IMG/VR virus record: IMGVR_UViG_3300030329_004647
Span: 62,001-126,000 of that record
Direction: 5' to 3' (one strand)
DNA length: 64,000 nucleotides
This document shows, piece by piece, positions 13,811 to 40,897 of this stretch (its first letter is position 1; the number at the start of each line of letters is the position of its first letter). Below the pieces are notes generated by a model, which did no database searches, was not told where the DNA came from, and saw only the letters and a program-made list of their open reading frames with translations. Position numbers and translations under genes: made by a program.

Positions 13811-16282
13811 CTACATTAAAAAAGGTTTGTCATAAGGAGTTCTAGGCATTTTATCTAACACCTCACCTAACTCTACTTTTTTTATAATTCTTAAAGTTTT
13901 TAAAAGAGAATCAGGAGTAACTGATATGGTATCTATTCCCTCCCTCACCAAAAACTCTGCAAAATCTGGAAAATCTGAAGGACCTTGACCACATATACCA
14001 ACCTTAGTGTTGGTTTTTTTAGCTGACTTAATTAAAAATTTAATAGAATCTTTAACAGCTTCATTTCTTTCATCATATAAGTTAGCTACTAACGCGGAAT
14101 CTCTATCTAAACCTAAAGTAAGTTGGGTTAAGTCATTAGAACCTATTGAAAAACCATCTATATGTTTAGCAAATTTTTCAGCTAATAAAATATTTGACGG
14201 TAGTTCCGCCATAAGATATATTTCTAATTCATTTTCGCCTCTTTTTAAACCATATTCCTCCATTACCTCGTAAACTTTATTTAATTCGTCTACTGTACGA
14301 CAAAAAGGAATCATAACTACCACATTTTTAAGACCCATTTTTTCTCTCACTCTTTTTATAGCTTTACACTCCATACCAAAAGCCTCTTTGTATTCTTCTG
14401 AGTAATATCTAGAAGCACCCCTCCAACCAATCATTGGATTTTCCTCTACAGGTTCGAAGTGTTCTCCACCAAGTAAATTTCTATATTCGTTAGTTTTAAA
14501 ATCAGATAACCTAACTATAACTTTTTCTGGATAAAAAGAAGACGCGATTTTTGCAATACCATAAGATAGTCTTTTAATGAAAAAAGTTTCTTCATCCACA
14601 TAACCTCGAGTTAATTCATCTATTTGTGAGGATAATTTATCATCACCTAACTCTTTATGTCTTAACAAAGCTAATGGATGAGCTTGAATATAATTGTTTA
14701 TGATAAATTCTTCTCTAGCAAGCCCAACCCCCTTATGTGGCAAATTGGAAAACTTAAAAGCTAAATCAGGTGAGGCTACATTTAACATTATAGGTGTGTT
14801 TACCTTAGGAAGGTCTTGTAAGCTAGTCTCTACTTTTTTATAAGGTATCTCACCTTCATATACTTTACCCATATCCCCACTTGCACAACTTACAGTAACT
14901 AAGTCACCATCATTCAGTATTTCTGTAGCATTACCAGTTCCTACTATCGCGGGTACACCCATTTCTCTAGCGACAATAGCCGCGTGACAGGTTCTACCTC
15001 CTTTATTTGTTACAATAGCACCAGCTTTTTTCATTATAGGTTCCCAGTCAGGGTCAGTCATTTCAGTGACTAAAATATCACCATCTTTAAAATCTAATCC
15101 ATCAGCACTACCATCTCTACCATCTATAGAAAACATAATACTCACATTACCTACACCTATACCATCACCCACAGCAATTCCTTGTATTAGTTTTGTATTT
15201 TTAAAATCTTCTTCTAATTTATATTCTACAATCTTATCTTTTTCTTTTTGAGAATGTATTGTTTCTGGTCTAGCTTGAAGAATGTACAACTCATTAGTTA
15301 ATCCGTCTATTCCCCACTCCACATCCATAGGACACCAGTCGTTTTTTCTTTCAGAGTAGTAACGCTCTATTAATGTTACCCACTCAGCTATTTTTAAAAC
15401 TTCTTTGTCTGTAATACAAAATTCATTTTGTTGATAATCTTGTATGTTAACTATTTTTGTCATCTTTCCAGGGTCATCACCATATACCATTTTTTTATCT
15501 TTAACACCCATTCTTTTTTCGATAATAGAACTATATCCTTGTTCTAAAGTAGGTTTGAATACCATAAACTCATCAGGTGAAATAAAACCCTGGACAACCA
15601 TTTCCCCAAGTCCATATGAACCATTTATTAACACAGCGTCCTTAAAACCACTTTCAGTATCTATAGAAAAAGCTACACCTGAAGAACCCAAATCAGTTCT
15701 AACCATTTTTTGTACACATACTGATAAAGCAACATCAAAATGACTAAAACCAAAAGTATCCCTATATGAAATAGCTCTGTCCGTAAACAACGAAGCAAAA
15801 CAATTCCTAACAGACTCTAATAAAGATTCTGGACCCCTAACATTTAGATACGTTTCCTGTTGTCCTGCAAATGAAGCGTCTGGTAAGTCTTCCGCTGTAG
15901 CTGAAGACCTTACAGCTACATCAGTCATTTCTTGACCATACACTTTTGACATTTTATTGTATTTTTCTCTAACCTCATCTTTTAAGTCTTGAGGCCATTT
16001 ACCATTTCTAATAATTTGCCTAACCTCGGTACCTACCTTTCTGAGAGATACGACATTGTCTTTTTCGATTGAATTTATAAGTGTTTCAATTAATGTTTTT
16101 AATCCGTTATAACGCAAAAACTCCCAGTAAGCTTCTGAAGTTATAGCGAAACCGTCAGGAATTCTTATTCCGACAGATTTTAAGTTTTGAATCATTTCAC
16201 CTAAAGAGGCGTTTTTACCACCAACTAAAGGTAAATCATCCATAGAAACTTTATTTAAATCTACAGTATATTGTTTTTTCAT
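13811..16282 (-). CDS. ppsA: phosphoenolpyruvate synthase (pyruvate, water dikinase)
   Basis: VGGKNASLGEM, AVRSSATAEDLPDASFAGQQETYLN, ILQARPET, GGRTCHAAIVARE (phospho-His), ENPMIGWRG, FSIGSNDLTQLTLG. Confidence 0.97.
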   Translation of the reverse strand: MKKQYTVDLNKVSMDDLPLVGGKNASLGEMIQNLKSVGIRIPDGFAITSEAYWEFLRYNGLKTLIETLINSIEKDNVVSLRKVGTEVRQIIRNGKWPQDLKDEVREKYNKMSKVYGQEMTDVAVRSSATAEDLPDASFAGQQETYLNVRGPESLLESVRNCFASLFTDRAISYRDTFGFSHFDVALSVCVQKMVRTDLGSSGVAFSIDTESGFKDAVLINGSYGLGEMVVQGFISPDEFMVFKPTLEQGYSSIIEKRMGVKDKKMVYGDDPGKMTKIVNIQDYQQNEFCITDKEVLKIAEWVTLIERYYSERKNDWCPMDVEWGIDGLTNELYILQARPETIHSQKEKDKIVEYKLEEDFKNTKLIQGIAVGDGIGVGNVSIMFSIDGRDGSADGLDFKDGDILVTEMTDPDWEPIMKKAGAIVTNKGGRTCHAAIVAREMGVPAIVGTGNATEILNDGDLVTVSCASGDMGKVYEGEIPYKKVETSLQDLPKVNTPIMLNVASPDLAFKFSNLPHKGVGLAREEFIINNYIQAHPLALLRHKELGDDKLSSQIDELTRGYVDEETFFIKRLSYGIAKIASSFYPEKVIVRLSDFKTNEYRNLLGGEHFEPVEENPMIGWRGASRYYSEEYKEAFGMECKAIKRVREKMGLKNVVVMIPFCRTVDELNKVYEVMEEYGLKRGENELEIYLMAELPSNILLAEKFAKHIDGFSIGSNDLTQLTLGLDRDSALVANLYDERNEAVKDSIKFLIKSAKKTNTKVGICGQGPSDFPDFAEFLVREGIDTISVTPDSLLKTLRIIKKVELGEVLDKMPRTPYDKPFLM

Positions 16283-18749: not shown

Positions 18750-20297
18750 GTGAAAAGTATTATACAAAAATTATTAAGAGAATCTAGTGGGTATTACGGA
18801 CACGTATTAACACAAAATTTACCTAAAGAATTGGACAATAGGTTATATACCTTATTACATATGTTAGGTGGTATGAACTTTATGGATGTTATTAAATTTG
18901 GAGAAAAGGCCAGTGAAGATGAAATTAATATTTTAACCACTAAGGTTATGCAATTTCCCTCAGAACAACATGAAATACTTAGAAATGCTGGAGGATACGA
19001 AATATTAAAAGACTCTAGTGCATACCAAGAAATTGTGGATATGATAAAATCTATAGCTTATAGAGACACTATAGATGAGTCATTAGACGACTTAAAATAC
19101 GCAGAAGAACCTAAAGAAAAACATGTTAGGAGAATGAATAGAGATTTAGGTCAGTTACACGGATTTCCCATACAAGTTTTTAAAAATATCCCACCACCTA
19201 AAAACGAATCAGAAACTACAGAAGAAGAAATCGTACATTTAGACTCTATCCCTGTGGATGAGAAATTTGTAAAAAATGCTGATGAAACTGAAGAATATTT
19301 TGAAAAGTTTCTTAAAACAAAAGGATTAGAATACCCAAAAGAAGATATAAAAATCTACCTACCAGGTGTAAGGTCTATCATCCTACAATTAAAATACTAC
19401 TACAATCGTCCTAGACCAGGACAAGTAGCAGACGCTAAAGGAATGGATTTTGACCCAGAAAGTTTAAAATCCGCCTCCACACCCTCCTACCCTTCTGGTC
19501 ACGCAACCCAAGGAAGGTTTATAGCTAGATACCTCTCAGACTTGTATCCCGAATATGAAAAAGATTTAATGAAAATAGGTGATGACATAGCTTACAGTAG
19601 AAATATGGCAAAGGTACACTACCCCAGTGATTCTGTGTTTGGAAAAGAATTGGGTGACTCATTATATCAGTATATAATAAAAAACCAACCACTCAATGAA
19701 GACGTACAATATGACAAAGAAGGATATCCCACTAATGACACAAATCCATACGTTCTTAGGTATATAACACCTAAAACTAAAAAGGCTTTATTTAAACATT
19801 GGGACTCTTTAGGTAATATGGAGTGGTCTAGTTTAAAACTTTTTGGTATAGAGGGTGAGGATGAAGCATTTGATAATATTGCTGATGTACTGTATCCACT
19901 ATTAGCAATAGAATGGTTAGGTGGTGTTGAAAATACTCCTTTAGCTAAAGAAGATTGGATGGATATTAGGAGGGGAAGACAAACGAGAATACGATATAAA
20001 ATCATACCACTTAGATTTGATTACTTATTTGATGAAAGTGAAAGGTTTGGTGAACATGGTTACTCCTGTTATGATATAAAAGTTGTAATAGATTGGGGAA
20101 CACCAGGACCAGAAGAACTTCAAATGTTAGAAGAATTGGTCCCAAAAGACAAACGAAACAAATTAATGTCTTATGGGAACTATGATGAGAACACCCTTGA
20201 ACTCATAGAACAATTATGGGAAACTACTGAGCACATAAGGGGTGATGTTGGTGTTATGCAGTTTTGTCGACTAGAAATTGAGGTTGTTAACCCTTAA
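18750..20297 (+). CDS. multi-module protein with a central PAP2 (acid phosphatase / haloperoxidase) domain
   Basis: KYYYNRPRP, PSYPSGHA and SRNMAKVHYPSD are the three PAP2 motifs. Confidence 0.85.
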   Translation: MKSIIQKLLRESSGYYGHVLTQNLPKELDNRLYTLLHMLGGMNFMDVIKFGEKASEDEINILTTKVMQFPSEQHEILRNAGGYEILKDSSAYQEIVDMIKSIAYRDTIDESLDDLKYAEEPKEKHVRRMNRDLGQLHGFPIQVFKNIPPPKNESETTEEEIVHLDSIPVDEKFVKNADETEEYFEKFLKTKGLEYPKEDIKIYLPGVRSIILQLKYYYNRPRPGQVADAKGMDFDPESLKSASTPSYPSGHATQGRFIARYLSDLYPEYEKDLMKIGDDIAYSRNMAKVHYPSDSVFGKELGDSLYQYIIKNQPLNEDVQYDKEGYPTNDTNPYVLRYITPKTKKALFKHWDSLGNMEWSSLKLFGIEGEDEAFDNIADVLYPLLAIEWLGGVENTPLAKEDWMDIRRGRQTRIRYKIIPLRFDYLFDESERFGEHGYSCYDIKVVIDWGTPGPEELQMLEELVPKDKRNKLMSYGNYDENTLELIEQLWETTEHIRGDVGVMQFCRLEIEVVNP

Positions 20298-28091: not shown

Positions 28092-28123
28092 AAAAAAACC
28101 CAGATTTCTCTGGGTTTCTTTTT
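28092..28123. terminator. bidirectional intrinsic terminator
   Basis: AAAAAAACCCAGA-TTTC-TCTGGGTTTCTTTT directly after the tmRNA CCA end. Confidence 0.85.
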
Positions 28124-28528
28124 TGGTGGAGGTGGGGGGTTTCGAACCCCCGTCTTGCTCATCTTCAAAAAATATCTATCCTACACGTTTAGTTTATTCT
28201 ACCTATTCGATTATTTCTACAGAATAAACAACCCTAAAAATAACCTAGACTATCTAATGTTTAACCACTCAAATAGCGAGAGTAGGATTGATTTGTGTAA
28301 ATGACATTTCATAATTAAAGGAACAAATCTTAAGACCCTTTAAAGAAATGGAACCATAGGATAACCTAGTTATGCTACAGTCACAGCTGACTCCTCACGG
28401 ACAAGTCCTAAAGTCGCCAACTTAGCAAGTGTTTTGCCAGTTAAAAAAATGAATCAGTTTTACAAGCTTAATTCAGGCTTGACGTGCTGATATCAATCGA
28501 CTGATGCCAATCAATTCCAGTCACCCCC
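28124..28528 (-). ncRNA. ssrA: tmRNA (405 nt)
   Basis: 5' GGGGGUGACUGGAAUUGA pairs with 3' CACCUCCACCA, with a G3-U alanine determinant and encoded CCA; T-arm GGGGGUUCGAAACCCCC; internal tag ORF at 28438-28370. Confidence 0.93.
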
Positions 28529-28543
28529 ATATTTTAAATATCT

Positions 28544-28744
28544 TTATAATGTTTGAGGGTCAACATTATTTTTTTCTTCATCTTTTTTAGCTTTAGCTTC
28601 CTCCATTGTTTTTTTATATGTTTCCATTAGAGTTTCCCTCATCTGCTCCATTTTCTTCATTGAAGCGTTTGCCTCCTGTAATTTTCTACTCTTCCAGGAA
28701 GCTAATTTTTTCTTGTGATTTTTTCTATGTCTTGATTTTGGCAT
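28544..28744 (-). CDS. small basic helical protein upstream of tmRNA
   Basis: MPKSRHRKNHKKKLASWKSRK...; sigma-A promoter at 28765-28796. Confidence 0.75.
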   Translation of the reverse strand: MPKSRHRKNHKKKLASWKSRKLQEANASMKKMEQMRETLMETYKKTMEEAKAKKDEEKNNVDPQTL

Positions 28745-28812: not shown

Positions 28813-31800
28813 ATGATATCAAATTTACACAAAATAGAAAGAAAGATTAATGTTTTAAACTCTATATATGAGGATAAGAGCCCTTCCTATAGATTAAAAG
28901 TACTTCACAAGAATTTAAATTTAAGTTTAAAAGAATGTGGAGTAATACTAAAAGAATCATCATCCACTAACCCAGACTATACTTATTTTTACGAAAACTT
29001 AGAAAAAAAGTTTAAAAAAAATTCATATAAGAACATAAGAGATATAATTTTTAATTATTTAAATGGGTGGATAATAGAAGAAGATATATTTTGGGTTTTT
29101 TACGTTGATTCAGGTGACGACATATTTCTAGACCCAACAGACGGGCCTGATAAATTAACCATAGTTTATCTTTTAACACAAAAAATACAATCTATTTTCC
29201 CTATAAGTGAAGACGAAGCATTTGAGATATCAAATGATTTTATAGACTTTAAATTAAACGAAGAAAAAACTAAAAGACTAGTAGAACAAAATCAGAAAAA
29301 AATTAATCCACCAGTACAACCAGGAGACTATATTAGGGTTATAGAGATAGACCATGATATGTTTCCACCAAGTGAATACGAACAAAATTATATGCCACCT
29401 GAACATTTAGAATTAGGTGAAGTACAAGAAGTATACCAAGAGGAGAATCCAATAGATGGGTCAGAAGTCACAATGTTAAGAGTTTATTTTCCAAACCTGG
29501 AATTTGATAGTGAAGATGTTATGGGTGGTGGAGGTCTAGAAGGTGGATATGATGATGGAGTTAGAGTTTTAGTGTTACCTTATGACACCTATATTAAAAC
29601 AGATGAGGTATTAACCGAACACGGTATCATAGGTGATAATAAACCGAACAGACCTAGAATACCTGATATTTTAAGAAAAAATTTAATTAGAGCAAGATTT
29701 GAAAGACCTGGAGGTTGGGGAAGAAATAGCGAACTTTTTATTTTATACCTAACTCCAGTAGGTAAAATTATGGACATCCAATTCGGAAGTACAACAAACG
29801 CTTCAGTATCCCCATTCCAAATAAACCAACAAGTAAGTTTTGGTGATTTATATAAATTTGAACAAGACTCTCCCTTTGATTTAAGAATGTTCGGAAGACT
29901 AAGAGAACAAGACGAACAAATGAGTTTATTTCCTACCGGAGACTGGGAATTTACAGTTGGTTTTGAAGATTACGCACTAGAAAACGGAGAAATGATTGCG
30001 GGTTCGGACCAAGATACCGCTGATTGGATAAGAAAAACAGCACCAGAAAGACTAGTAGCAAAAATCTTTAAAATGTGGGATGCTGGTGGAATAGACTTCT
30101 CCAACCTTAAGTTATTAGGATTACCAACTAACAGTGCTTTAATTACTTTTCTATTAAAACGATATATTAGAAATACTAAAAAACCTATTCCAGTTTCTTA
30201 TACATTTGATTGTGATGATTTAAGTGACCTATTTGATAAAGATAGTAGAGATTATAATTTAGATTATATTAAACAATATCTTTGTGGTGATGATAGTTTT
30301 TGGGATACTGACCTGTGGTATGGTAATGAGTGGAGTGATTATATGTCAGATGATATAGATGAAACAAATTGGAAAATTATAAGTGAAATTTTTGGAGGGG
30401 CATCACCATCAGATGCTGAAGATATATTAAACAGAAGTTCTTCTAGTGAAGAGGTAGACGAGTTAATAGAAAAATACGATGAGGAAATAGATGATATTAG
30501 AAATTTTGTAACCCAATCACATGATACAGCTATGGAAGATGCTACTAAAAGTGCGATGGCAGCAGATATTAAAGAAAAAATATTAGACCATTTTGGTGGT
30601 GGTAGCCAACATGATGGAAAAATCCAAGGAAAGTTATTTAGAAATGATAATGGAAAATTTAATTATGTGATTGAAGGGGATTTAAGGGATTTAGTTAACG
30701 AGGTGTGGGATAATACAGAAGACGTTTTTCAATTCCACCCAGATTATTCTAACACCACACTAGAAGACGCTTTAATGGAAATGGATGGAAGAACAATGGT
30801 TTCATATGATTTAGACCAACATTTATTTAGATTATTAATGGAAGAAGAATTTAAATTTTGGGACTACTGTGAAGGAAGATTGGGGGATTGTTTAGAGGTT
30901 GATACTAAATTTTTTGATGGTTACTGGCACCCAAGTTACGACATTAATGAATATCTCATTGACCGACTATATGAATTAATACCAGGACCAATACAAGAAC
31001 AGACAGAGAGGTATTTACAAAAAAAAGGAGACCAATTAACCCGTAAAGTTGTAAAAGACATTTTACATATATTAAAAACAGAAAAAGTTTTAGACGACCT
31101 TTATATCTTACCAGACCACGTTTCTGGCGTAGATGGAGACGAGTATACTAGGGGAGACTTAGAGTTTAATGTTACCCTTCATATTCTACAAAACCCAAAT
31201 CAAGATAGAGCTTTTATGGTCGATGCAAACATGGGCGGAGATTTTGATGATGAAATCGAGGTAATCATTAGTTTAGGCCCAAAGTTTGGACAAGGAGATT
31301 ATGAACAAGTACAAGGATTTTTAAATGATTATGTTCGTCACGAAATAGAACATGTTATAGACGCGTTAGAAGGTAATGAAGTAGAAACACCACAAGGTTT
31401 AAGTCCATTTGAATACTACACACAACCACATGAAGTTAGAGCACAAAAAGCTGGATTTAAAAGAAGAGCAAAAATAGAAAAAAGACCAGTTGAGGATATT
31501 GTTAAGGATTATATAGAATATAGGCAAAGTATAGATAAATTGACTGATGATGAAAAAAATGCATTAGTAACCCAACTAACCGAACAAGAAAAAAAAAGTA
31601 GATTCAAAACCATATACGAAAATGATAATTGGAAATATGTATGGCCAATAGGGGACGAGTCCTTTTGTGAAATAGCAAAGGGTACTAAATGGTGTGGGGA
31701 ATGGACTAAAGACCAGAACTGGTACCAGTCTATAGGTAGTAGTGGAACTCATTATATTTTAATAGATAAAAAAACTGGTGAAAAGTATAGTCTTGTAGAC

Positions 31801-33093
31801 CAAGAAAAGGTACCTGGAATGCCTAGTTATAAAGTAAGAATTTATGATAAGGATAGAGAATTCCTTAGTACACATAGATTTTTAGCGGACAAACCAACAC
31901 TACATGAATTGTTCAATCAATCCTATACCATGTTAGATAAATTAAGATATAATGTAGAAATTCCAAAAGAGGACTTAGATAATTTTTATAAAGAAACGAT
32001 AGAGCAGGATGTCTACGGAAGAGGAGAGGGTCACGAGAGCGCTAAACTTTTAGAGCTGGTATATAAAATTATAAAAGACCCAACCTTTGAGGGTCTTAAA
32101 CAACAATTAGAAGAAAACTATAATGGTGGGTTGACCGTATTAACTGAGGGTGATGTCCCAGTAATTAATAGTATGATTGCTGGTAAACAGTTTTTAAGTA
32201 TCTATCTTCCCGATGAGGATTTTAAGTCAGAGTGGATGAATATAGGTGATGATGATGATTATTATTTTGATTTAGCTGTAGACCGCTATTATAGTGAGGA
32301 CCATTGTGAAGAGATGGAGGAAGATGAAATTGCGTATATAGGGAGTTACATGAACAAAGAAAATATAAAAAAATTAAATAACCTTTCTGAAATTATTGGT
32401 GAACCAATAGGAGACTGGAGACAGGAATCTGAAATAGATGAGTATCTAACCAAATACTTTACCAAAGATTGGAACGACTATATATGGAGAATTGTGGAAC
32501 AGATTGGGTGTGCGGTAGGAAGAAACCGAGTTAAGGATATAAGAAAATTAGTGAAAGAGGGGTTACTTTTAGACGTGGATTATGTTGGTGCTAGAAACTA
32601 CGCAATGTGGAGAATAGATATAACATATCCTGAATTATTATACCTTGTAGGGATATATGGTGTGGATAATATAAAACAATTAGAAGACCATTCCATAAAT
32701 GACCTAGATGTAAATTTATATGACGCGTGGTGGGATAGTTGGTCTCTCGAAGGTGGTGAAGAAGATATTAATTGGGAAATGGGCAGATTCTTAGATAATG
32801 TAATGGAAGAATACGGTGATGACCTTAAAACTCTAGGTGAGAATGAAGAAAAATTTATGGAAACGATAAATAACTTAGGATTTACAAAACCCTATAGAGA
32901 ATGGCAACTAAAACAAGATGTTGAGGGAAGCAGTTACCAAAGGTCAATAATAATAAAAGATTGGGATTTAAAGAGTGGTAAAATACACATCCAGATACAA
33001 GAAAATGATGAACAAGGAAGATGGCAAACAAAACAACACCAAACCACTATTGATGAATTACCAACCTATGTTAATCAACACCAACTATTTTAA
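28813..33093 (+). CDS. 1426-aa multi-module protein (putative polyprotein) including an HExxH zincin-like module
   Basis: VRHEIEHVID...PHEVRA; a YENDNWKYVWP...GTKWC module; modules punctuated by LVEQ/LTEH/LREQ/IQEQ/LTEQ. Confidence 0.75.
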   Translation: MISNLHKIERKINVLNSIYEDKSPSYRLKVLHKNLNLSLKECGVILKESSSTNPDYTYFYENLEKKFKKNSYKNIRDIIFNYLNGWIIEEDIFWVFYVDSGDDIFLDPTDGPDKLTIVYLLTQKIQSIFPISEDEAFEISNDFIDFKLNEEKTKRLVEQNQKKINPPVQPGDYIRVIEIDHDMFPPSEYEQNYMPPEHLELGEVQEVYQEENPIDGSEVTMLRVYFPNLEFDSEDVMGGGGLEGGYDDGVRVLVLPYDTYIKTDEVLTEHGIIGDNKPNRPRIPDILRKNLIRARFERPGGWGRNSELFILYLTPVGKIMDIQFGSTTNASVSPFQINQQVSFGDLYKFEQDSPFDLRMFGRLREQDEQMSLFPTGDWEFTVGFEDYALENGEMIAGSDQDTADWIRKTAPERLVAKIFKMWDAGGIDFSNLKLLGLPTNSALITFLLKRYIRNTKKPIPVSYTFDCDDLSDLFDKDSRDYNLDYIKQYLCGDDSFWDTDLWYGNEWSDYMSDDIDETNWKIISEIFGGASPSDAEDILNRSSSSEEVDELIEKYDEEIDDIRNFVTQSHDTAMEDATKSAMAADIKEKILDHFGGGSQHDGKIQGKLFRNDNGKFNYVIEGDLRDLVNEVWDNTEDVFQFHPDYSNTTLEDALMEMDGRTMVSYDLDQHLFRLLMEEEFKFWDYCEGRLGDCLEVDTKFFDGYWHPSYDINEYLIDRLYELIPGPIQEQTERYLQKKGDQLTRKVVKDILHILKTEKVLDDLYILPDHVSGVDGDEYTRGDLEFNVTLHILQNPNQDRAFMVDANMGGDFDDEIEVIISLGPKFGQGDYEQVQGFLNDYVRHEIEHVIDALEGNEVETPQGLSPFEYYTQPHEVRAQKAGFKRRAKIEKRPVEDIVKDYIEYRQSIDKLTDDEKNALVTQLTEQEKKSRFKTIYENDNWKYVWPIGDESFCEIAKGTKWCGEWTKDQNWYQSIGSSGTHYILIDKKTGEKYSLVDQEKVPGMPSYKVRIYDKDREFLSTHRFLADKPTLHELFNQSYTMLDKLRYNVEIPKEDLDNFYKETIEQDVYGRGEGHESAKLLELVYKIIKDPTFEGLKQQLEENYNGGLTVLTEGDVPVINSMIAGKQFLSIYLPDEDFKSEWMNIGDDDDYYFDLAVDRYYSEDHCEEMEEDEIAYIGSYMNKENIKKLNNLSEIIGEPIGDWRQESEIDEYLTKYFTKDWNDYIWRIVEQIGCAVGRNRVKDIRKLVKEGLLLDVDYVGARNYAMWRIDITYPELLYLVGIYGVDNIKQLEDHSINDLDVNLYDAWWDSWSLEGGEEDINWEMGRFLDNVMEEYGDDLKTLGENEEKFMETINNLGFTKPYREWQLKQDVEGSSYQRSIIIKDWDLKSGKIHIQIQENDEQGRWQTKQHQTTIDELPTYVNQHQLF

Positions 33094-33909
33094 TCAATTA
33101 AGTAAACTCCAAGTAGTAGGTTTATGTTTATAACTGTACTTATTTTCTCCTAATATATTTAAAAGTCTTTCACCTAACTTTATAGCGTTCTCCACATCCT
33201 CGACAACTACATATTCATAATTAGAGTGCCAGCCATAATAACCCGCTGCAAAATTTAAACAACTAAAATCAAACATTTCTTTTAATACCATAGTATCCGT
33301 ATACGGGTGATTTAACCAGTCAGTAATTCCATGTTCTAATATAATATCTTTACACTTTTCGATAAAGTCACCATCTTCCTTATACAACTTTACACCCATT
33401 AAGGTTTTACTCATAGTATTATTTTCAGTAGAATCAAACTGTATAGCGTATCCTACATCTTTAAAAAATTCTTTATCCGCTTGTCTGGTTCCTTGACAAC
33501 CTGTTTCTTCAGCGACTGGAAAAAACACTTTAACATTATCTAATTTGTCTAATAACTCTAAACAAATAAAAACCCCAGCTTTGTCATCACCCCCTATACC
33601 ACATCTATTACCATCATTATCGGAATACGCAACTAAAGATAGTTTTTTTTCGTCTTGAGCATTTAAATGATACTCCTCTTTTACAGTATAGTCTTGGATT
33701 TCATGCACACTATCCAAATGAGCCACCAAACACGGAAAATGTTTAGCATTACCCTTAGTCACATAAATCGAACCAAGCTTATCTATCTTATAGGAATAAC
33801 CCTTTTTATCTAAAATACCTGTAACATATTCTATTAATAAGTCTTCTTCCCAAGTATAGGTAGGTACTGATAAAATATTTTTAAGTTTTTTTATTGTTTT
33901 TTTATTCAT
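33094..33909 (-). CDS. M20/M28/M42-clan zinc peptidase
   Basis: AHLDSVH, GGDDKAG, AEETGC, IQFD and YHS-like C-terminal His motif. Confidence 0.85.
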   Translation of the reverse strand: MNKKTIKKLKNILSVPTYTWEEDLLIEYVTGILDKKGYSYKIDKLGSIYVTKGNAKHFPCLVAHLDSVHEIQDYTVKEEYHLNAQDEKKLSLVAYSDNDGNRCGIGGDDKAGVFICLELLDKLDNVKVFFPVAEETGCQGTRQADKEFFKDVGYAIQFDSTENNTMSKTLMGVKLYKEDGDFIEKCKDIILEHGITDWLNHPYTDTMVLKEMFDFSCLNFAAGYYGWHSNYEYVVVEDVENAIKLGERLLNILGENKYSYKHKPTTWSLLN

Positions 33910-33970: not shown

Positions 33971-34777
33971 ATGAAATTTATGATTAAAGAAGAGATAAAT
34001 AGAATTAAAAATTTAATGTTAGTTAATGAAGAAAATGAGATGGGTCAATATATGGATTCCACATATCTTAAAACATCCGAACAAGCAGGGATAGGAGATG
34101 AAGAAACAGAAGTAATTGTATTTAACACAATTAAAGATGCTATAGAACATAATATGAAATTAGTGATGTTAAGACCAGAATATGTTGAAGTAGCTCGTAA
34201 CCTTATAGATAGTGAAGGAGCAAATGTTTTAGTGGGTACGGTTATAGATTTTCCATATGGGAACGGTAGTGTAACTGATAAAGTACAAGAAGCTAAACAA
34301 GCTGTAAATAATGGAGCAGATGAATTAGATTTTGTAATAGATTATAGAGCTTATTTAAGAGGAAATGTAGAAAAAGTTAGTAGAGAGATTAAAGAAGGTT
34401 CTGAAATTGGATTAAAAAATGGAAAAACAGTAAAATGGATTTTAGAGACTGCAGCCTTAACTGAAGACCAAATAGGGGAATTAACTTCTATAATTAGAGA
34501 TGTGATTATTGACAATTTTGGTGAAGGTGAAGCCGCAAATGTTTTTGTAAAAACATCTACAGGATTTTTTACACCAGAAGGGGGTGGTCCTGGAGGAGCT
34601 ACTGAAGAAGCGGTATCTATTATGACAAATAACGCAGGTCCCTTAAAGGTTAAAGCATCTGGTGGTATTTATAGTCAGGACGATTTGAAAAAAATGGTGG
34701 GAGCTGGAGCAAGTCGTATAGGTACTTCAGCAGCTAAAGAAATAATGTTAGGTCAAAAAACAGAAAAGGATTATTAA
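33971..34777 (+). CDS. deoC: deoxyribose-phosphate aldolase with class A leader
   Basis: MDSTYLK, VGTVIDFPYG, GADELDFVI, KWILET, FVKTSTG (Schiff-base Lys), KASGGI, RIGTS. Confidence 0.93.
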   Translation: MKFMIKEEINRIKNLMLVNEENEMGQYMDSTYLKTSEQAGIGDEETEVIVFNTIKDAIEHNMKLVMLRPEYVEVARNLIDSEGANVLVGTVIDFPYGNGSVTDKVQEAKQAVNNGADELDFVIDYRAYLRGNVEKVSREIKEGSEIGLKNGKTVKWILETAALTEDQIGELTSIIRDVIIDNFGEGEAANVFVKTSTGFFTPEGGGPGGATEEAVSIMTNNAGPLKVKASGGIYSQDDLKKMVGAGASRIGTSAAKEIMLGQKTEKDY

Positions 34778-36674: not shown

Positions 36675-38699
36675 TTACTTTTGTTTAATTTTAACTTTGT
36701 TTGTTTTTTTGTTGTAGTTAACAAAATAAGAATTTCCTTCAGTAACAGTACCTTTTAATATTTCTTCTGAGATTAAATCTTCTAAAATTGTTTGGATAGC
36801 TCTCTGTAAAGGTCTCGCTCCATACTTTTCATCATAACCCTCTTCAGAAATGTGTTTAATCACTGTAGGTCCAAAACTAAAATCGTAATCTTTTTCTTTT
36901 AATCTAATTTTTAATTCAGCTAATTGAATTTTTACAATTTTTTGTAAGTCCACAACTTTAAGTGACTCAAATATAACAACCTCATCTATTCTATTAAGAA
37001 ATTCAGGATTGAACGTGTTCCTCAGAGACTTAGAAATTAAAGACCTCATATGTTCTTCTTTGTGTTGTTCTTTAGCTTTAGTAGAAAAACCAATTCCTTC
37101 TCCCCAGTCTTGTACTTTTTTAACCCCTATATTAGATGTCATAATAATTAGAGTATTTTTAAAATTTATTTTTCTTCCACTTGAATCTGTAATATAACCA
37201 TCATCTAAAATTTGTAACATTAGATTAAAAATATCAGGATGAGCCTTTTCAACCTCATCAAATAAAATTAAAGAATAAGGATTATTACGAACTTTTTCTG
37301 TTAGTTGTCCTCCTTCATTATAACCCACATATCCAGGAGGAGAACCGATTAGTCTAGATAAAGCGTGTTTTTCTTGGAATTCAGACATATCTACTCTAAT
37401 TAATGATTCTTCAGAACCAAATACATGGGAAGACAGTTGTTTAGCTAAATAAGTTTTACCAACACCAGTAGGCCCTAAAAATATAAAAGAACCTATAGGT
37501 CTATTAGTATCCTTTATACCCACACTATTACGTTTAATAGCTTTAGATATTTTACTAACAGCAGTTTCTTGTCCAATAACCACACCTCTTAATTTATCCT
37601 CAAGATTAAGAAGTTCTTTTTTCTCCCCAATATCTAACCTACTTAATGGTATTTTAGTTATATCCGAAACAACCTCCATAATACTATCAACTGTTATTTC
37701 TGTTCTTTTTAAGTCTTGGTCTTTTTCCCACTTTAATTTTAATTTTTCTAAATCTGTAACTAATTTTCGCTCACTATCTCTTATGTCAGCAGCTTTTTCA
37801 TAATTTTGAGTCTTTACTACTTTCATTTTTTCTTCTTTAAGTTTTGCTATTTTTGTTTTTAGATTTTCTATTGATTTAGGGTACTTTACCTCTATTTGAA
37901 ATTTAGCACCAACTTCGTCTAGGATATCTATAGCTTTATCAGGAAACTGACGTTCATTAATATATCTTTCCGCAAATTTTACACAACTCTCTAAAGCTTC
38001 TTCTGAATAATTTACCTTATGATGAGATTCGTACTTATGTTTTATCTGCTTCAATATTGTAAGAGTTTCTTCGGTACTTGTTGGAGCTATACTCACTTTT
38101 TGAAATCTTCTTTCTAAAGCTCCATCTTTCTCAACCTTTTCTCTATACTCGTTTAAGGTTGTAGCCCCTATACATTGTACTTCACCTCTCGCTAAAGCGG
38201 GTTTAAAAATATTAGCAGCGTCTAAAGAACCAGACGAATTTCCAGTACCCACAACAGTGTGCAACTCATCAATAAAAATAATAACATCTTTATTATTTTT
38301 TAGTTCATCTATTACAGCTTTCATTCTTTCCTCAAACTGACCCCTGTACTTAGTTCCAGCCACTAGTGATGTTAACTCTAATGAAACTATTCTTTTATCT
38401 AACAATGGTCTAGGACCCTCACCCCTACTTAACATAATAGACAAACCCTCTACTATTGCTGTTTTTCCACAACCAGGTTCACCTATTAAAACAGGATTGT
38501 TCTTTTTTCTACGACACAACGTTTGTGCTATTCTTTTAATTTCTTTTTTTCTACCAATAACTGGGTCTAATTCACCTGCTCTTGCTAATGCTGTTAAATC
38601 TGTAGAAAAATTATCCAGAATGGGAGTTCCTTCTGGTTGTATTTCATCTCTATTTTCGTCTCTTCTAGGTTTATCTGACGCTTCTTTAAAATCTGACAT
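36675..38699 (-). CDS. clpC: ClpC/ClpB-family AAA+ ATPase lacking the N-terminal Clp-N domain
   Basis: LDPVIGR, GEPGCGKT, FIDELH, GPTGVGKT, IDMSE-like VDMSEF, LFDEVEKAH, GARPL; short ClpC-type middle domain. Confidence 0.9.
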   Translation of the reverse strand: MSDFKEASDKPRRDENRDEIQPEGTPILDNFSTDLTALARAGELDPVIGRKKEIKRIAQTLCRRKKNNPVLIGEPGCGKTAIVEGLSIMLSRGEGPRPLLDKRIVSLELTSLVAGTKYRGQFEERMKAVIDELKNNKDVIIFIDELHTVVGTGNSSGSLDAANIFKPALARGEVQCIGATTLNEYREKVEKDGALERRFQKVSIAPTSTEETLTILKQIKHKYESHHKVNYSEEALESCVKFAERYINERQFPDKAIDILDEVGAKFQIEVKYPKSIENLKTKIAKLKEEKMKVVKTQNYEKAADIRDSERKLVTDLEKLKLKWEKDQDLKRTEITVDSIMEVVSDITKIPLSRLDIGEKKELLNLEDKLRGVVIGQETAVSKISKAIKRNSVGIKDTNRPIGSFIFLGPTGVGKTYLAKQLSSHVFGSEESLIRVDMSEFQEKHALSRLIGSPPGYVGYNEGGQLTEKVRNNPYSLILFDEVEKAHPDIFNLMLQILDDGYITDSSGRKINFKNTLIIMTSNIGVKKVQDWGEGIGFSTKAKEQHKEEHMRSLISKSLRNTFNPEFLNRIDEVVIFESLKVVDLQKIVKIQLAELKIRLKEKDYDFSFGPTVIKHISEEGYDEKYGARPLQRAIQTILEDLISEEILKGTVTEGNSYFVNYNKKTNKVKIKQK

Positions 38700-39040: not shown

Positions 39041-40897
39041 ATGGGAAAAGTAATTGGAATCGATTTAGGGACCACAAATTCTTGTGTATCAGTAGTAGAA
39101 GCTGGAAGTCCTGTAATCATAGTAAATTCAGAGGGTAAAAGAACCACGCCTTCTGTAGTAGCATTTAAAGATGGTGATAGAGTAGTTGGTGAACCAGCAA
39201 AAAGACAAGCGGTATCAAATCCGGATAAAACAATATATTCAGTAAAAAGATTTATAGGTAGTAAGTTTAGTGAAATTAGTGACGAATCTAAAAAAATGGC
39301 TTATAAGGTAAATAAAGGGAAAGGTAATGTTGTTAATATTAAAGTTGATGACAAGTCTTACATCCCCCAAGAAATATCTGCTGTTGTTTTACAAAATCTA
39401 AAAAAAACAGCTGAAGAATACCTAGGGTCTAAAGTAAAACAAGCTGTTATAACTGTACCCGCGTATTTTAATGACGCACAAAGACAAGCTACAAAAGAAG
39501 CGGGAGAAATAGCAGGTTTAGAGGTTCTTAGAATAATTAACGAACCGACCGCTGCGGCATTAGCTTACGGTATAGATGAAAAAAATGAAAAAACTATTGC
39601 CGTCTACGATTTAGGTGGTGGTACTTTTGATATTTCTATATTAGAAATATCTGATGGACTTTTCGAAGTTAAGTCTACAAATGGAGACACACAATTAGGT
39701 GGTGATAATTTTGATGAAGTAATTATTGATTGGTTATTATCGGAATTTAAAACAGAGTCTGGTGTTGATTTAACAAAAGACGCTTCCGCTTTACAAAGAT
39801 TAAGAGAAGCTTCTGAAAAAGCAAAAGTAGAATTGTCTACCGCGAGCACAACAGAAATTAATTTACCTTATTTAACAGCTGATAATACAGGTCCAAAACA
39901 CTTAGTTAGAAATTTAACTAAAGCAAAGTTCCAATCAATGATTGACGACCTAATTAAAAAAAGTATTAGCCCTTGTAGGAAAGCTTTAAAAGACGCTGGA
40001 CTTAAAGTTACAGATATAGATGAAGTTTTATTGGTTGGTGGTTCTACAAGAATCCCAGCAATTCAAGAAGCAGTTGAAAAGTTTTTTAAACAAAAACCGT
40101 CTAAAGGTGTAAATCCAGATGAGGTGGTAGCTATGGGAGCAGCAATCCAAGGAGGCGTGTTAGCTGGAGAGGTTAAAGATGTTTTACTATTAGATGTTAC
40201 ACCTCTTTCACTAGGTATTGAAACTATGGGTGGTGTTATGACAAAACTAATAGATTCCAACACTACTATTCCTACTAGTAAATCAGAAGTGTTTTCTACA
40301 GCTTCAAATAATCAACCAGCAGTAGACATACACGTAGTTCAAGGTGAAAGACCTATGGCTGATGACAATAGAACACTTGGAAGATTTCAACTAACTGACC
40401 TACCACCAGCACCTAGAGGGGTTCCTCAAATTGAGGTTACTTTTGATATTGACGCAAATGGTATTATCAATGTTTCAGCAAAAGATAAAGGAACAGGTAA
40501 AATACAAAATATTAAAATTGAGTCTGGCAGTTCATTGTCTGAAGAAGAAATTAATAAAATGAAAACAGAAGCTGAACAAAACGCTAAAGAAGACGCTATT
40601 AAAAAAGATAAAGTAGAAAAACTTAATACGGCAGACGCGACAATATTCCAAACAGAAAAACAAATAAAAGAGTTTGGAGATAAACTTGACGACACAGATA
40701 AATCAAGATTAGAAAATACAATTAAAGAGTTAGACGAGGTAAGAAAAAATGAGGACCTTGAAGGTATTGATGATTTAACTGAAAAAATAAATGAAATGTG
40801 GCAAGAAATTAGTACAAAACTATACCAACAAACCGACCAACCAGAACCAGAGACCAATGATGGTCCTTCAGATGTAAAATTTGAAGAAGTTAAGTAG
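39041..40897 (+). CDS. dnaK: molecular chaperone DnaK (Hsp70)
   Basis: [35 protein letters not shown]-terminal DVKFEEVK. Confidence 0.98.

What the first reader, a model, noticed from the sequence alone, without database searches (positions are those of the whole stretch)
28124..28528. Phage tmRNA with a long, non-canonical tag: (A)GKTLAKLATLGLVREESAVTVA
Seen in sequence: the resume context UUAACU-GGC matches the usual AACU-G pattern, and the frame 28438-28370 gives 22 codons plus a stop. Established: bacterial tags are typically about 10-11 aa ending in YALAA or similar, and the C-terminal Ala-Ala is read by ClpX. This tag is about twice as long, ends in VTVA, and contains an amphipathic stretch plus V-R-E, which resembles the [LI]-x-E sites. 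Inference: the phage may rewire ribosome rescue so that tagged proteins escape host proteases or go to a phage protease. The resume codon is inferred, not proven.
Basis: partly seen in the sequence, partly recalled or inferred. Interest (0 to 1): 0.75.

Follow-up and report, generated by a model that had tools for sequence, protein, structure and literature searches.

The report
Jumbo-phage tmRNA with clade-specific long tag
A marine jumbo phage carries a real tmRNA whose unusually long 22-residue tag is conserved as a peptide in at least 120 related phage contigs and always sits next to a phage-encoded, N-domain-less ClpC unfoldase, which suggests but does not prove a phage-owned route for disposing of unfinished proteins.

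Summary
Window 28124-28528 (-) is a full-length tmRNA (Rfam 107.9 bits, E 3e-41; ARAGORN), and the tag GKTLAKLATLGLVREESAVTVA* is read from the GGC resume codon. The window lies in a 232 kb, about 72% complete marine jumbo phage with a T4-like capsid.

The tag belongs to a family. At least 120 IMG/VR contigs carry 79 distinct tags, all 21-22 aa, with the pattern G-x-[TV]-[LFI]-x-K-[ML]-x-x-[LVI]-G-L-x-R-(acidic)-V-x-[VA]-A. Codon substitutions show selection on the peptide, while the RNA backbone diverges beyond BLAST detection.

By contrast, 115 sampled cellular tags are 8-21 aa (median 9 in the random-phyla sample), and nearly all end in xAA.

An N-domain-less ClpC with a ClpP-docking [VIL]GF loop lies upstream of the tmRNA in 63 of 63 loci with enough flank. 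ClpP is present in all large genomes, and SmpB in 2 of 6 near-complete genomes.

The phage ClpC, the resume context and the tag start point to Bacteroidota ancestry, and Bacteroidota tags are short and canonical.

The idea that the phage ClpC-ClpP reads the tag is circumstantial. "Escape from ClpX" is not supported, because LVA-type ends are strong ClpXP degrons in E. coli. The amphipathic-helix and [LI]-x-E readings fail.

This is a new variant of a known kind.

The parts
28124..28528 (-). tmRNA (ssrA) gene, 405 nt, one-piece standard form with an encoded CCA end
   Evidence: ARAGORN; Rfam RF00023 at 107.9 bits, E 3.2e-41, full model; metatranscriptome contigs at 28158-28383 and 28183-28403 with 0 differences.
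28503..28528 (-). 5' half of the tRNA-like domain (gene positions 1-26); the acceptor strand GGGGGUG forms G3:U70 with the 3' strand
   Evidence: ARAGORN domain map; sequence. Compensatory changes at acceptor pairs 5 and 6 are seen across the family.
28124..28166 (-). 3' half of the tRNA-like domain (T arm, acceptor 3' strand, ACCA)
   Evidence: ARAGORN; Rfam alignment.
28439..28445 (-). Resume context UUUAACU immediately 5' of the resume codon; the A at -4 (28442) is invariant in the family
   Evidence: entropy 0.0 at -4. The same ..AA(C/A)U|GGC context occurs in all sampled cellular tmRNAs whose tags start with G.
28373..28438 (-). Tag reading frame, 22 codons: GKTLAKLATLGLVREESAVTVA. The resume codon GGC is at 28436-28438.
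   Evidence: ARAGORN; frame shown by the synonymous/nonsynonymous pattern and by stops in the other frames; 79 distinct homologous tags.
28370..28372 (-). UAA stop codon of the tag frame
   Evidence: Family members end in TAA or TAG, some with two or three stops in tandem.
28092..28121 (-). Intrinsic terminator hairpin plus U-run, starting 3 nt after the tmRNA 3' end. It is bidirectional and also closes the convergent 417-aa ORF.
   Evidence: 13-pair stem; 2 terminator-like sites found against 0.4 expected.
36675..38699 (-). ClpC-type double AAA+ unfoldase, 674 aa. It lacks the N-terminal adaptor and phospho-arginine binding domain, has a UVR-type M-domain motif, two Walker A motifs, and a ClpP-docking I-G-F loop at residues 536-538.
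   Evidence: Pfam. Aligns to S. aureus ClpC residues 149-805. The loop is [VIL]GF in 81 of 81 clade homologues. It lies upstream of the tmRNA in 63 of 63 loci with at least 4.5 kb of flank. Cellular homologues are 815-880 aa.
33094..33909 (-). M42/M20-family metallopeptidase-like protein, 271 aa, conserved between ClpC and the tmRNA in the clade
   Evidence: Pfam Peptidase_M42 at E 4e-6, 26.5 bits against a cut-off of 23.2, partial match. Homologue present in 95 of 120 family loci. 46% identical to the L500 neighbour. Its structure model was uninformative.
39041..40897 (+). DnaK/Hsp70, 618 aa, divergent from ClpC; part of the phage's proteostasis gene set
   Evidence: phrog_22485 at 859 bits; tblastn hits annotated as DnaK.

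Best explanation
This is a working phage-encoded tmRNA. Shown or strongly supported: it has every sequence hallmark of a chargeable tmRNA, it is found in RNA libraries, and its message is read from GGC to append Ala plus the 22 residues GKTLAKLATLGLVREESAVTVA to nascent chains on stalled ribosomes. This tag is one member of a phage-clade-specific family that is under purifying selection as a peptide. Inferred: the tag is a degradation signal with two parts. The first is a Clp-type C-terminal end, V-x-[V/A]-A-COOH. The second is a conserved upstream element, K-[M/L]-x-x-[L/V/I]-G-L-x-R followed by an acidic patch, which supplies specificity that a 9-residue host tag does not carry. The most likely reader is the phage's own protease: the adjacent N-domain-less, and therefore adaptor-independent, ClpC docked on the phage ClpP. 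The neighbouring M20/M42-like peptidase would then trim the released peptides. The phage would thus rescue ribosomes during infection and channel the truncated products into its own disposal and amino-acid recycling route, distinct from the short ...[L/M]AA tags of the probable Bacteroidota host lineage. Most clade members must use the host SmpB, and some encode their own.
For: The tmRNA is real and complete, has a terminator, and matches RNA-library contigs. Frame and resume codon. The same GGC resume context occurs in cellular tmRNAs whose tags start with G. The tmRNA backbone is often not BLAST-alignable while the tag is kept. Cellular contrast: 115 tags of 8-21 aa, nearly all ending in xAA. 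ClpC linkage: 10 of 10 contigs at 2.6-5.7 kb; 63 of 63 loci with at least 4.5 kb of flank, and 83 of 83 hits on the same strand. ClpC lacks the N-domain but keeps [VIL]GF in 81 of 81. ClpP has an intact Ser-His-Asp triad and is present in 5 of 5 large clade genomes. No ClpX, Lon, ClpS or MecA was found in the 232 kb. In one subclade SmpB, tmRNA, peptidase and ClpC sit within about 6 kb. Five tmRNA phages with other tags have no such ClpC. Bacteroidota affinity: ClpC, SmpB nearest Atlas cluster, capsid relatives.
Against: No direct evidence links the tag to ClpC. Gene order is conserved across the clade, so adjacency may simply be inherited, and co-occurrence is confounded by phylogeny. ClpC and the tmRNA are separated by genes on the other strand in most relatives, so they are not one operon. 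One clade member (G010) keeps ClpC and ClpP but has no tmRNA at the syntenic site, so ClpCP has other work. The host is inferred, not known, and no cyanobacterial tmRNAs could be sampled. The record is only 72% complete. Structure-based tests gave no answer.
Confidence: 0.5

Rival explanations
1. The tag is a degron for host proteases only (ClpXP, Lon, FtsH or a periplasmic tail-specific protease). The conserved internal motif would bind a host adaptor or a second host protease. The phage ClpC-ClpP would be an unrelated proteostasis or host-takeover module that merely sits nearby.
For: The hydrophobic-V-A and V-A-A termini resemble strong E. coli ClpXP degrons (FKLVA, LVA). G010 keeps ClpC and ClpP without a tmRNA. 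Most clade genomes lack SmpB and so already depend on host trans-translation factors. Conserved gene order can explain the adjacency.
Against: It does not explain why a 21-22 aa peptide is conserved along its whole length when sampled cellular tags, including 50 from Bacteroidota, do the job with 8-10 residues ending in [L/M]AA. The tag family and the N-domain-less ClpC co-occur wherever this can be tested.
Confidence: 0.27
2. The tag is not primarily a degron. It might recruit a chaperone (the phage or host DnaK binding the K-[ML]-x-x-[LVI]-G-L-x-R core), sequester the tagged fragments, or act as a decoy that saturates a host protease.
For: The core has basic residues flanking a Leu-rich stretch, which fits the general Hsp70-binding pattern (established knowledge, used here as a lead only). 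The phage encodes DnaK next to ClpC. The peptide is conserved well beyond the C-terminal residues.
Against: The invariant terminal Ala and the conserved V at -4 with [V/A] at -2 look like a C-terminal recognition signal. The DnaK-SBD and tag complex prediction returned 'no answer'. DnaK was seen near the tmRNA in only 1 of 120 loci, although flanks were short.
Confidence: 0.12
3. Only ribosome rescue matters. The tmRNA adds rescue capacity during infection, and the tag sequence is a neutral passenger or is constrained only by RNA structure.
For: In several bacteria ribosome release, not tagging, is the essential function of trans-translation (established knowledge).
Against: The substitution pattern is that of coding sequence under purifying selection, including CGT/AGA Arg and TTG/CTT Leu switches. 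The tag is kept where the rest of the RNA has diverged beyond BLAST detection.
Confidence: 0.04
4. The tmRNA is a host gene fragment or an integration-site remnant carried passively by the phage, or the contig is a misassembled chimera.
For: tmRNA genes are common integration sites, and phages sometimes carry 3' fragments (PMC11915505).
Against: The gene is full length with both halves of the tRNA-like domain. It is conserved at one syntenic place in at least 120 phage contigs, including genomes with direct terminal repeats. It resembles no sampled cellular tmRNA beyond the universal 3' end. The window DNA recurs in many independent marine metagenomes.
Confidence: 0.01

Closest known systems
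Phage-encoded tmRNAs (mycobacteriophage Bxz1 group, Bacillus phage G, Streptomyces phages, huge phages of Al-Shayeb et al. 2020)
   Same: A one-piece tmRNA carried by a large lytic-type phage. Huge phages are also reported to carry SmpB (PMC7162821; PMC4131195).
   Different: The annotated phage tags seen here are host-like and short, for example ANSKFAFALAA in Streptomyces phages and ANPEFAMAA in LR756511. This clade has its own conserved 21-22 aa tag unlike any sampled cellular tag, and a fixed ClpC neighbour. The papers found did not analyse tags.
Bacteroidota-type tmRNA (tags such as GNTQYAMAA, GEYNYAMAA, GENNYALAA)
   Same: GGC resume codon with the same ..AA(C/A)U upstream context. The tag starts with G-N/E. 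The first nine residues of some family tags match GNTQYAMAA at 6 of 9. The phage ClpC is nearest to Bacteroidota ClpC.
   Different: The cellular tags stop after 8-10 residues and end in [L/M]AA. The phage tag runs on for 12-13 more residues (L-G-L-x-R-acidic-V-x-V-A). The RNA backbone is not alignable outside the 3' end.
Long cellular tags with a changed protease specificity (the 27-aa Mycoplasma tag read by Lon; long chlamydial, cyanobacterial and plastid tags)
   Same: These show that tag length and protease specificity can co-evolve and that tags of 8-35 aa exist (PMC8012679). Plastids and cyanobacteria also combine ssrA, clpC and dnaK (lead).
   Different: Those tags are cellular or organellar. 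The Mycoplasma-Lon and cyanobacterial tag sequences are recalled from memory and were not tested here. No Lon is encoded by the phage, and no cyanobacterial genome could be sampled.
ClpC-ClpP of Firmicutes, Actinobacteria and Bacteroidota
   Same: Two AAA+ modules, a UVR-type middle domain, a [VIL]GF ClpP-docking loop, and about 50-56% identity. A bona fide ClpP with an intact triad is also encoded.
   Different: The phage protein lacks the roughly 145-residue N-terminal domain that binds MecA or McsB adaptors and phospho-arginine. No adaptor gene was found.

Membership tests
tmRNA (Rfam RF00023, standard one-piece form) | Sequence and structure match over the whole covariance model above the curated threshold | tested here: met
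   107.9 bits against a gathering score of 47, E 3.2e-41, model positions 1-374 of 374. Relatives score 50-120 bits.
tmRNA (Rfam RF00023, standard one-piece form) | tRNA-Ala-like acceptor stem with G3:U70, a T arm, and a 3' CCA | tested here: met
   GGGGGUG pairs with CACCUCC to give G3:U. The T arm GGGGGUUCGAAACCCCC and ACCA are encoded. Pair 3 is G-U in the in-register family members, and pairs 5 and 6 covary.
tmRNA (Rfam RF00023, standard one-piece form) | Internal open frame without a start codon, beginning at a resume codon in a conserved upstream context and ending in a stop | tested here: met
   GGC follows UUUAACU, then 22 codons and UAA. The frame was proven by comparative codon analysis. 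The A at -4 is invariant.
tmRNA (Rfam RF00023, standard one-piece form) | Pseudoknot-rich body linking the tRNA-like and mRNA-like parts | tested here: inconclusive
   The Rfam alignment places PK1-PK4 but with several non-canonical pairs and low posterior probability in the middle. No separate covariation test of the pseudoknots was run.
tmRNA (Rfam RF00023, standard one-piece form) | Works with SmpB | not testable with these tools
   No SmpB in the 232 kb record, which is 72% complete. SmpB is encoded in 2 of 6 near-complete clade genomes and lies 0.9-2.1 kb from the tmRNA there. Use of host SmpB is inferred.
tmRNA (Rfam RF00023, standard one-piece form) | Is transcribed, charged with Ala, and tags proteins | tested here: inconclusive
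   Perfect-match contigs in two metatranscriptomes, restricted to the tmRNA in one of them. DNA carry-over is not excluded. Charging and tagging cannot be tested here.
Canonical ssrA degron (ClpX-type, about 10 aa ending in L-A-A) | Length of about 8-12 residues | tested here: not met
   22 residues here; the family is 21-22. Cellular samples have a median of 9 and a maximum of 21.
Canonical ssrA degron (ClpX-type, about 10 aa ending in L-A-A) | C-terminal Ala-Ala preceded by a hydrophobic residue | tested here: not met
   The window tag ends in T-V-A. In the family 13 of 79 end in AA and 59 of 79 end in [VILT]-A. This fails the family definition but not function: LVA-type ends are ClpXP degrons in E. 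coli.
ClpC subfamily of Hsp100/Clp ATPases (for the neighbour at 36675-38699) | Two AAA+ modules with Walker A motifs, a short UVR-type middle domain, and the D2-small domain | tested here: met
   Pfam AAA, AAA_lid_9, UVR, AAA_2 and ClpB_D2-small. Walker A motifs at residues 73 and 409. 726 bits to S. aureus ClpC.
ClpC subfamily of Hsp100/Clp ATPases (for the neighbour at 36675-38699) | ClpP-docking loop tripeptide [I/V/L]-G-[F/L] | tested here: met
   I-G-F at residues 536-538. The loop is VGF, IGF or LGF in 81 of 81 clade homologues.
ClpC subfamily of Hsp100/Clp ATPases (for the neighbour at 36675-38699) | N-terminal Clp_N repeat domain (adaptor and phospho-arginine binding) | tested here: not met
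   The alignment starts at S. aureus residue 149. There is no Clp_N Pfam hit. The ORF abuts the divergent DnaK intergenic region. Clade ORFs are 671-696 aa against 815-880 aa in bacteria.
ClpP serine protease (genome C1:12991-13662, outside the window) | ClpP fold match and the Ser-His-Asp catalytic triad | tested here: met
   PF00574 at 203 bits. The motifs GMAASMG, MIHQ and ERDNW align with the S. pneumoniae ClpP active-site motifs.

The most novel reading that the evidence does not exclude
A clade of roughly 320 kb aquatic jumbo phages, probably infecting Bacteroidota, runs a private trans-translation and proteolysis pathway. Its own tmRNA, with its own SmpB in some members, appends a clade-specific bipartite degron that differs from the host tag. 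An adaptor-independent ClpC lacking its N-domain, docked on the phage ClpP, reads that degron directly. An adjacent M20/M42-type peptidase then finishes the breakdown to amino acids. If so, the phage separates disposal of its own, or the host's, aborted translation products from host quality control. The tag may have arisen by extension of a 9-residue Bacteroidota tag past its original stop codon.
Probability: 0.3. Interest if true: 0.85.

Novelty: new variant of a known kind. Interest (0 to 1): 0.62.

Why it matters
Phage tmRNAs have been listed in genome surveys, but in the papers found here their tags were not analysed. The usual assumption is that they top up host ribosome rescue or sense host state.

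Here a large, environmentally recurrent phage clade conserves a tag peptide that is unlike any sampled cellular tag. It conserves the peptide more tightly than the RNA that encodes it, and keeps it beside a stripped-down ClpC, with ClpP and sometimes SmpB also encoded.

If the tag is read by the phage protease, it would be the first example I know of a virus that owns both the tagging and the degradation halves of trans-translation. It would also be a natural pair of orthogonal degron and protease, of the kind synthetic biology wants.

It also shows that ARAGORN misses about 70% of these genes and often miscalls the tag when it finds them. Phage tmRNA diversity is therefore under-reported.

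The hypothesis can be tested directly with recombinant proteins, without culturing the phage.

Tried and rejected
**Searches that found nothing or were truncated**
- (1) An exact 26-nt tag search in IMG/VR found nothing.
- (1) A search with the adjacent 417-aa protein found no relatives.
- (2) GenBank phages matched only at the universal 3' tRNA-like end.

**Host inference**
- (4) Comparing the tmRNA with cellular tmRNAs using an nhmmer family profile matched only the 3' end. The 5' half preferred Bacteroidota and Chlorobiota only weakly, at E about 0.008.
- (5) The cyanobacterial/plastid lead (ssrA + clpC + dnaK, longer tags ending in VA) could not be tested:
  - The phylum sampled from a 'Leptolyngbya' MAG was not cyanobacterial.
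  - No cyanobacterial handle existed among my loci.
  - One literature search was wasted because 'ANNIV' matched 'anniversary'.
  - PMC308836 is not held.

**Readings tested and rejected**
- (6) Amphipathic helix: the helical hydrophobic moment is no higher than in shuffles.
- (7) T4 prohead-protease [LI]-x-E site: the motif is not conserved across the family.

**Structure jobs that gave no evidence**
- (8) The single-sequence AlphaFold model of the M42-like peptidase has pLDDT 34.8 and is unusable. No fold search was run.
- (9) The complex prediction of the tag with the phage DnaK substrate-binding domain returned 'no answer' (score 0.02, controls not run). It is evidence neither for nor against.

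**Artefact and negative searches**
- (10) An apparent 155-nt insertion in the L500 tmRNA is a run of N, a scaffold gap.
- (11) No ClpS, MecA, Lon, ClpX zinc finger, SmpB or GOLLD was found in the 232 kb record.
Full report
**1. The observation**

ARAGORN finds one tmRNA in the window, at 28124-28528 on the minus strand, with the tag GKTLAKLATLGLVREESAVTVA* encoded at gene positions 91-159. Rfam RF00023 independently matches the same coordinates end to end (107.9 bits, gathering score 47, E 3.2e-41).

The sequence shows these features:
- an acceptor stem GGGGGUG/CACCUCC with the G3:U70 alanine identity pair
- a canonical T arm and an encoded CCA
- the resume context UUUAACU|GGC
- 22 sense codons followed by UAA

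A 13-bp hairpin with a U-run starts 3 nt after the CCA.

**2. What the window is**

The window is bases 62001-126000 of a 232 kb IMG/VR virus record that CheckV estimates to be 72% complete. It encodes a terminase large subunit, a portal and a T4-like major head protein.

The capsid's nearest named relatives are an uncultured 484 kb huge phage (LR756508), a Microcystis phage and Flavobacterium phages. The DNA recurs in many independent marine and seawater metagenomes from 2014 to 2025.

The 232 kb record holds no tRNA gene and no SmpB. It does encode a proteostasis set:
- a DnaK
- a ClpC-type ATPase
- a bona fide ClpP (203 bits) with an intact Ser-His-Asp triad, about 77 kb away

No ClpX, Lon, ClpS or MecA was found.

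**3. The frame, tested by comparison**

A capsid search in IMG/VR returned a large clade at 65-80% identity. Ten of about 23 longer contigs carry a full-length tmRNA. These contigs were chosen without reference to the tag, yet all encode a homologous 21-22 aa peptide in one frame.

The nucleotide changes are those of a coding region:
- Leu is CTT, TTA, TTG or CTC.
- Arg is CGT, AGA or CGC.
- The internal Gly is GGA, GGT, GGG or GGC.
- Entropy by codon position is 0.92, 0.45 and 1.26.
- Synonymous to nonsynonymous differing codon pairs are 230:366 in this frame, against 88:540 and 29:593 in the other two.
- The other two frames contain stops in 11 of 11 and 10 of 11 members.

Peptide conservation begins exactly at the first Gly. 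That codon is GGC at nucleotide level in 10 of 11 members, and the base at -4 is always A. All sampled cellular tmRNAs whose tags start with G also resume at GGC, behind ..AUAACU..UCAAAU or similar. The resume codon is therefore as well supported as sequence data allow.

**4. Size and shape of the family**

All 120 matches translate to tags of 21-22 aa, 70 of them distinct. Members whose first codon is GGA were found by another route, so the true number is larger. Contigs of 282-321 kb, some with direct terminal repeats, give the genome size.

Over 79 distinct tags the profile is:

| Position | Residues |
|---|---|
| 1 | G |
| 2 | N, E, K, D |
| 3 | T, V |
| 4 | L, F, I |
| 5 | variable |
| 6 | K |
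| 7 | M, L |
| 8 | variable |
| 9 | A, T |
| 10 | L, V, I |
| 11 | G |
| 12 | L |
| 13 | I, V, L, T |
| 14 | R |
| next three | acidic or small |
| -4 | V |
| -3 | variable |
| -2 | V, A |
| -1 | A |

Positions 1, 6, 11, 12 and -1 were forced by the pattern. They are equally fixed in the 12 distinct tags found independently of the tag, through the capsid or SmpB.

The tmRNA backbone diverges so far that BLAST aligns most members to the window's tmRNA only at the ends or not at all. The peptide is thus conserved more than the RNA.

ARAGORN detects only 37 of 131 family tmRNAs, and in only 21 of those does it start the tag at the right codon. In LR756508 it calls an 8-aa tag, whereas reading from the UAACU|GGC context gives an open frame of 36 codons.

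**5. How unusual the tag is**

I called tags in three samples of cellular tmRNAs:
- 36 from an effectively random set of phyla: median 9 aa, range 8-21, and 33 of 36 ending in [L/M/I/V]AA
- 50 from Bacteroidota: all 8-10 aa, ending in [L/M]AA
- 29 from another phylum: 8-13 aa

Published tags range from 8 to 35 aa (PMC8012679), and 10 aa is the most frequent length in a database of 97,179 sequences (PMC11915505). The length is therefore extreme but not unprecedented.

The family's typical ending is [V/I/L/T]-A without the second Ala (59 of 79). Among the 115 cellular tags only two do not end in xAA: one clearly spurious ARAGORN call and one ending in YAC.

**6. Context across the clade**

The window's ClpC homologue aligns to S. 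aureus ClpC residues 149-805. It lacks the N-terminal domain that binds adaptors and phospho-arginine. It keeps two Walker A motifs, a UVR-type middle domain and an I-G-F loop at the ClpP-docking position.

- In the ten capsid-derived contigs it lies 2.6-5.7 kb from the tmRNA on the same strand. In the window the distance is 8.1 kb, because a 1426-aa ORF is inserted.
- In the pattern-derived set it is present in 63 of 63 loci with at least 4.5 kb of upstream flank. All 83 ClpC hits are on the tmRNA's strand.
- The docking loop is VGF, IGF or LGF in 81 of 81.
- An M20/M42-like peptidase lies between the two in 95 of 120 loci.
- ClpP is present in 5 of 5 large genomes.
- SmpB is present in 2 of 6 near-complete genomes.

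In the subclade with SmpB the order is: GOLLD RNA, SmpB, SET-domain protein, small ORF, tmRNA, 455-aa protein, peptidase, ClpC, all within about 7 kb.

Five tmRNA-bearing phages with canonical or unrelated tags, two of them complete genomes, have no such ClpC. LR756508, with its putative 36-aa tag, has a 50%-identical ClpC that lies far from its tmRNA.

One clade member (G010) has ClpC and ClpP but only tRNAs and a group I intron where the tmRNA should be.

**7. Probable origin and host**

Among 45 diverse bacterial genomes, the ten best ClpC matches (52-56% identity, 758-816 bits) are all Bacteroidota. Other phyla reach 51% or less.

Other evidence points the same way:
- The phage SmpB's nearest Atlas cluster is Bacteroidota-rich.
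- Cultured phages with a related capsid infect Flavobacterium.
- Tags that start with G and resume at GGC are seen in Bacteroidota, Chlorobiota, Verrucomicrobiota and one actinobacterial MAG.
- The first nine residues of some family tags match the complete Bacteroidota tag GNTQYAMAA at 6 of 9. Windows at other offsets reach at most 4 of 9.

This suggests the tag arose by extension of a Bacteroidota-type tag beyond its stop. It is an inference. Cyanobacteria and plastids, which also combine ssrA, clpC and dnaK, could not be sampled.

**8. Expression**

Contigs from two independent marine metatranscriptomes cover 28158-28383 and 28183-28403 with no differences. In one library nothing else in a 4.5 kb stretch is covered. 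A loose end in the other library reads as a relative's tag end...STVAVA*. DNA carry-over in RNA libraries cannot be excluded.

**9. Mechanism**

Shown:
- The tmRNA is complete.
- The tag frame is established.
- The peptide is under purifying selection.
- The tag is clade-specific.
- It is linked to an N-domain-less ClpC that can dock on ClpP.

Inferred: the tag is a bipartite degron read by the phage ClpC-ClpP.

The C-terminal V-x-[V/A]-A fits Clp-type recognition. In E. coli the strongest pentapeptide degron found was FKLVA, which is ClpXP-dependent (PMC10862746).

The amphipathic-helix and [LI]-x-E ideas did not survive testing. Structure-based tests were uninformative.

**10. Verdict**

It is a member of the tmRNA family whose tag fails the definition of the canonical ssrA degron. 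It is best described as a new variant: a phage-clade-specific long tag embedded in a phage-encoded Clp module. I found nothing like it in the papers searched.

Noticed in passing
whole genome record G000 (232 kb); relatives L123, L129, L258, L500: The 232 kb record holds no tRNA gene at all. Clade relatives carry tRNA arrays close to the tmRNA. Either the array lies in the missing ~28% of the genome or this lineage has lost it.
   Followed up: partly
L500:5250-5671, L501:3040-3461, L504:3307-3717, L507:51-462: A GOLLD RNA (Rfam RF02032, 307-315 bits) sits immediately upstream of the phage SmpB gene in one subclade, next to tRNAs and about 1.5-3 kb from the tmRNA. None was found in the window's own genome record.
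   Followed up: partly
L258:11459-11675 (G010): A group I intron (72.5 bits) lies between tRNA genes and the ClpC gene in the one clade member that has no tmRNA at the syntenic position.
   Followed up: no
L009:1501-1947 (LR756508.1, 484 kb huge phage): This tmRNA has the same UAACU|GGC resume context, and reading from GGC gives an open frame of 36 codons ending ...KPAAV*. ARAGORN instead reports an 8-aa tag from another frame. Other unrelated long phage tags were also seen: GKNIPVNLLAQGQVGHSNFAYAG (L017, a complete 210 kb genome) and GNTINFVPDYSRAEIRLVA (L041).
   Followed up: partly
window 28813-33093 (+): A 1426-aa ORF with no Pfam or PHROG match sits between the tmRNA and the peptidase. 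A homologue was seen in only 1 of 120 family loci, so it looks like a lineage-specific insertion that pushed ClpC 8 kb away from the tmRNA.
   Followed up: partly
window 13811-16282 (-): A full-length PEP synthase / pyruvate phosphate dikinase-type enzyme of 823 aa, with all three Pfam domains at E values from 5e-29 to 5e-119. This is an unusual central-metabolism gene for a phage. A DeoC/LacD-type aldolase (33971-34777) and a PAP2 phosphatase-domain protein (18750-20297) lie nearby.
   Followed up: no
window about 28544-28744 (-): A small, very basic ORF of about 66 codons (MPKSRHRKNHKKK...) lies directly upstream of the tmRNA on the same strand (read). My tblastn check used wrong coordinates, so its conservation in relatives is unknown.
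   Followed up: no
family tmRNAs (L348-L467, L123-L134): ARAGORN finds only 37 of 131 family tmRNAs and starts the tag at the right codon in only 21 of those. The Rfam model finds the ones tested. Surveys of phage tmRNAs that rely on ARAGORN will miss or mis-describe this family.
   Followed up: yes
L500:7356-7906: An apparent 155-nt insertion in this tmRNA is a run of N, a scaffold gap, not an intron or mobile element.
   Followed up: yes
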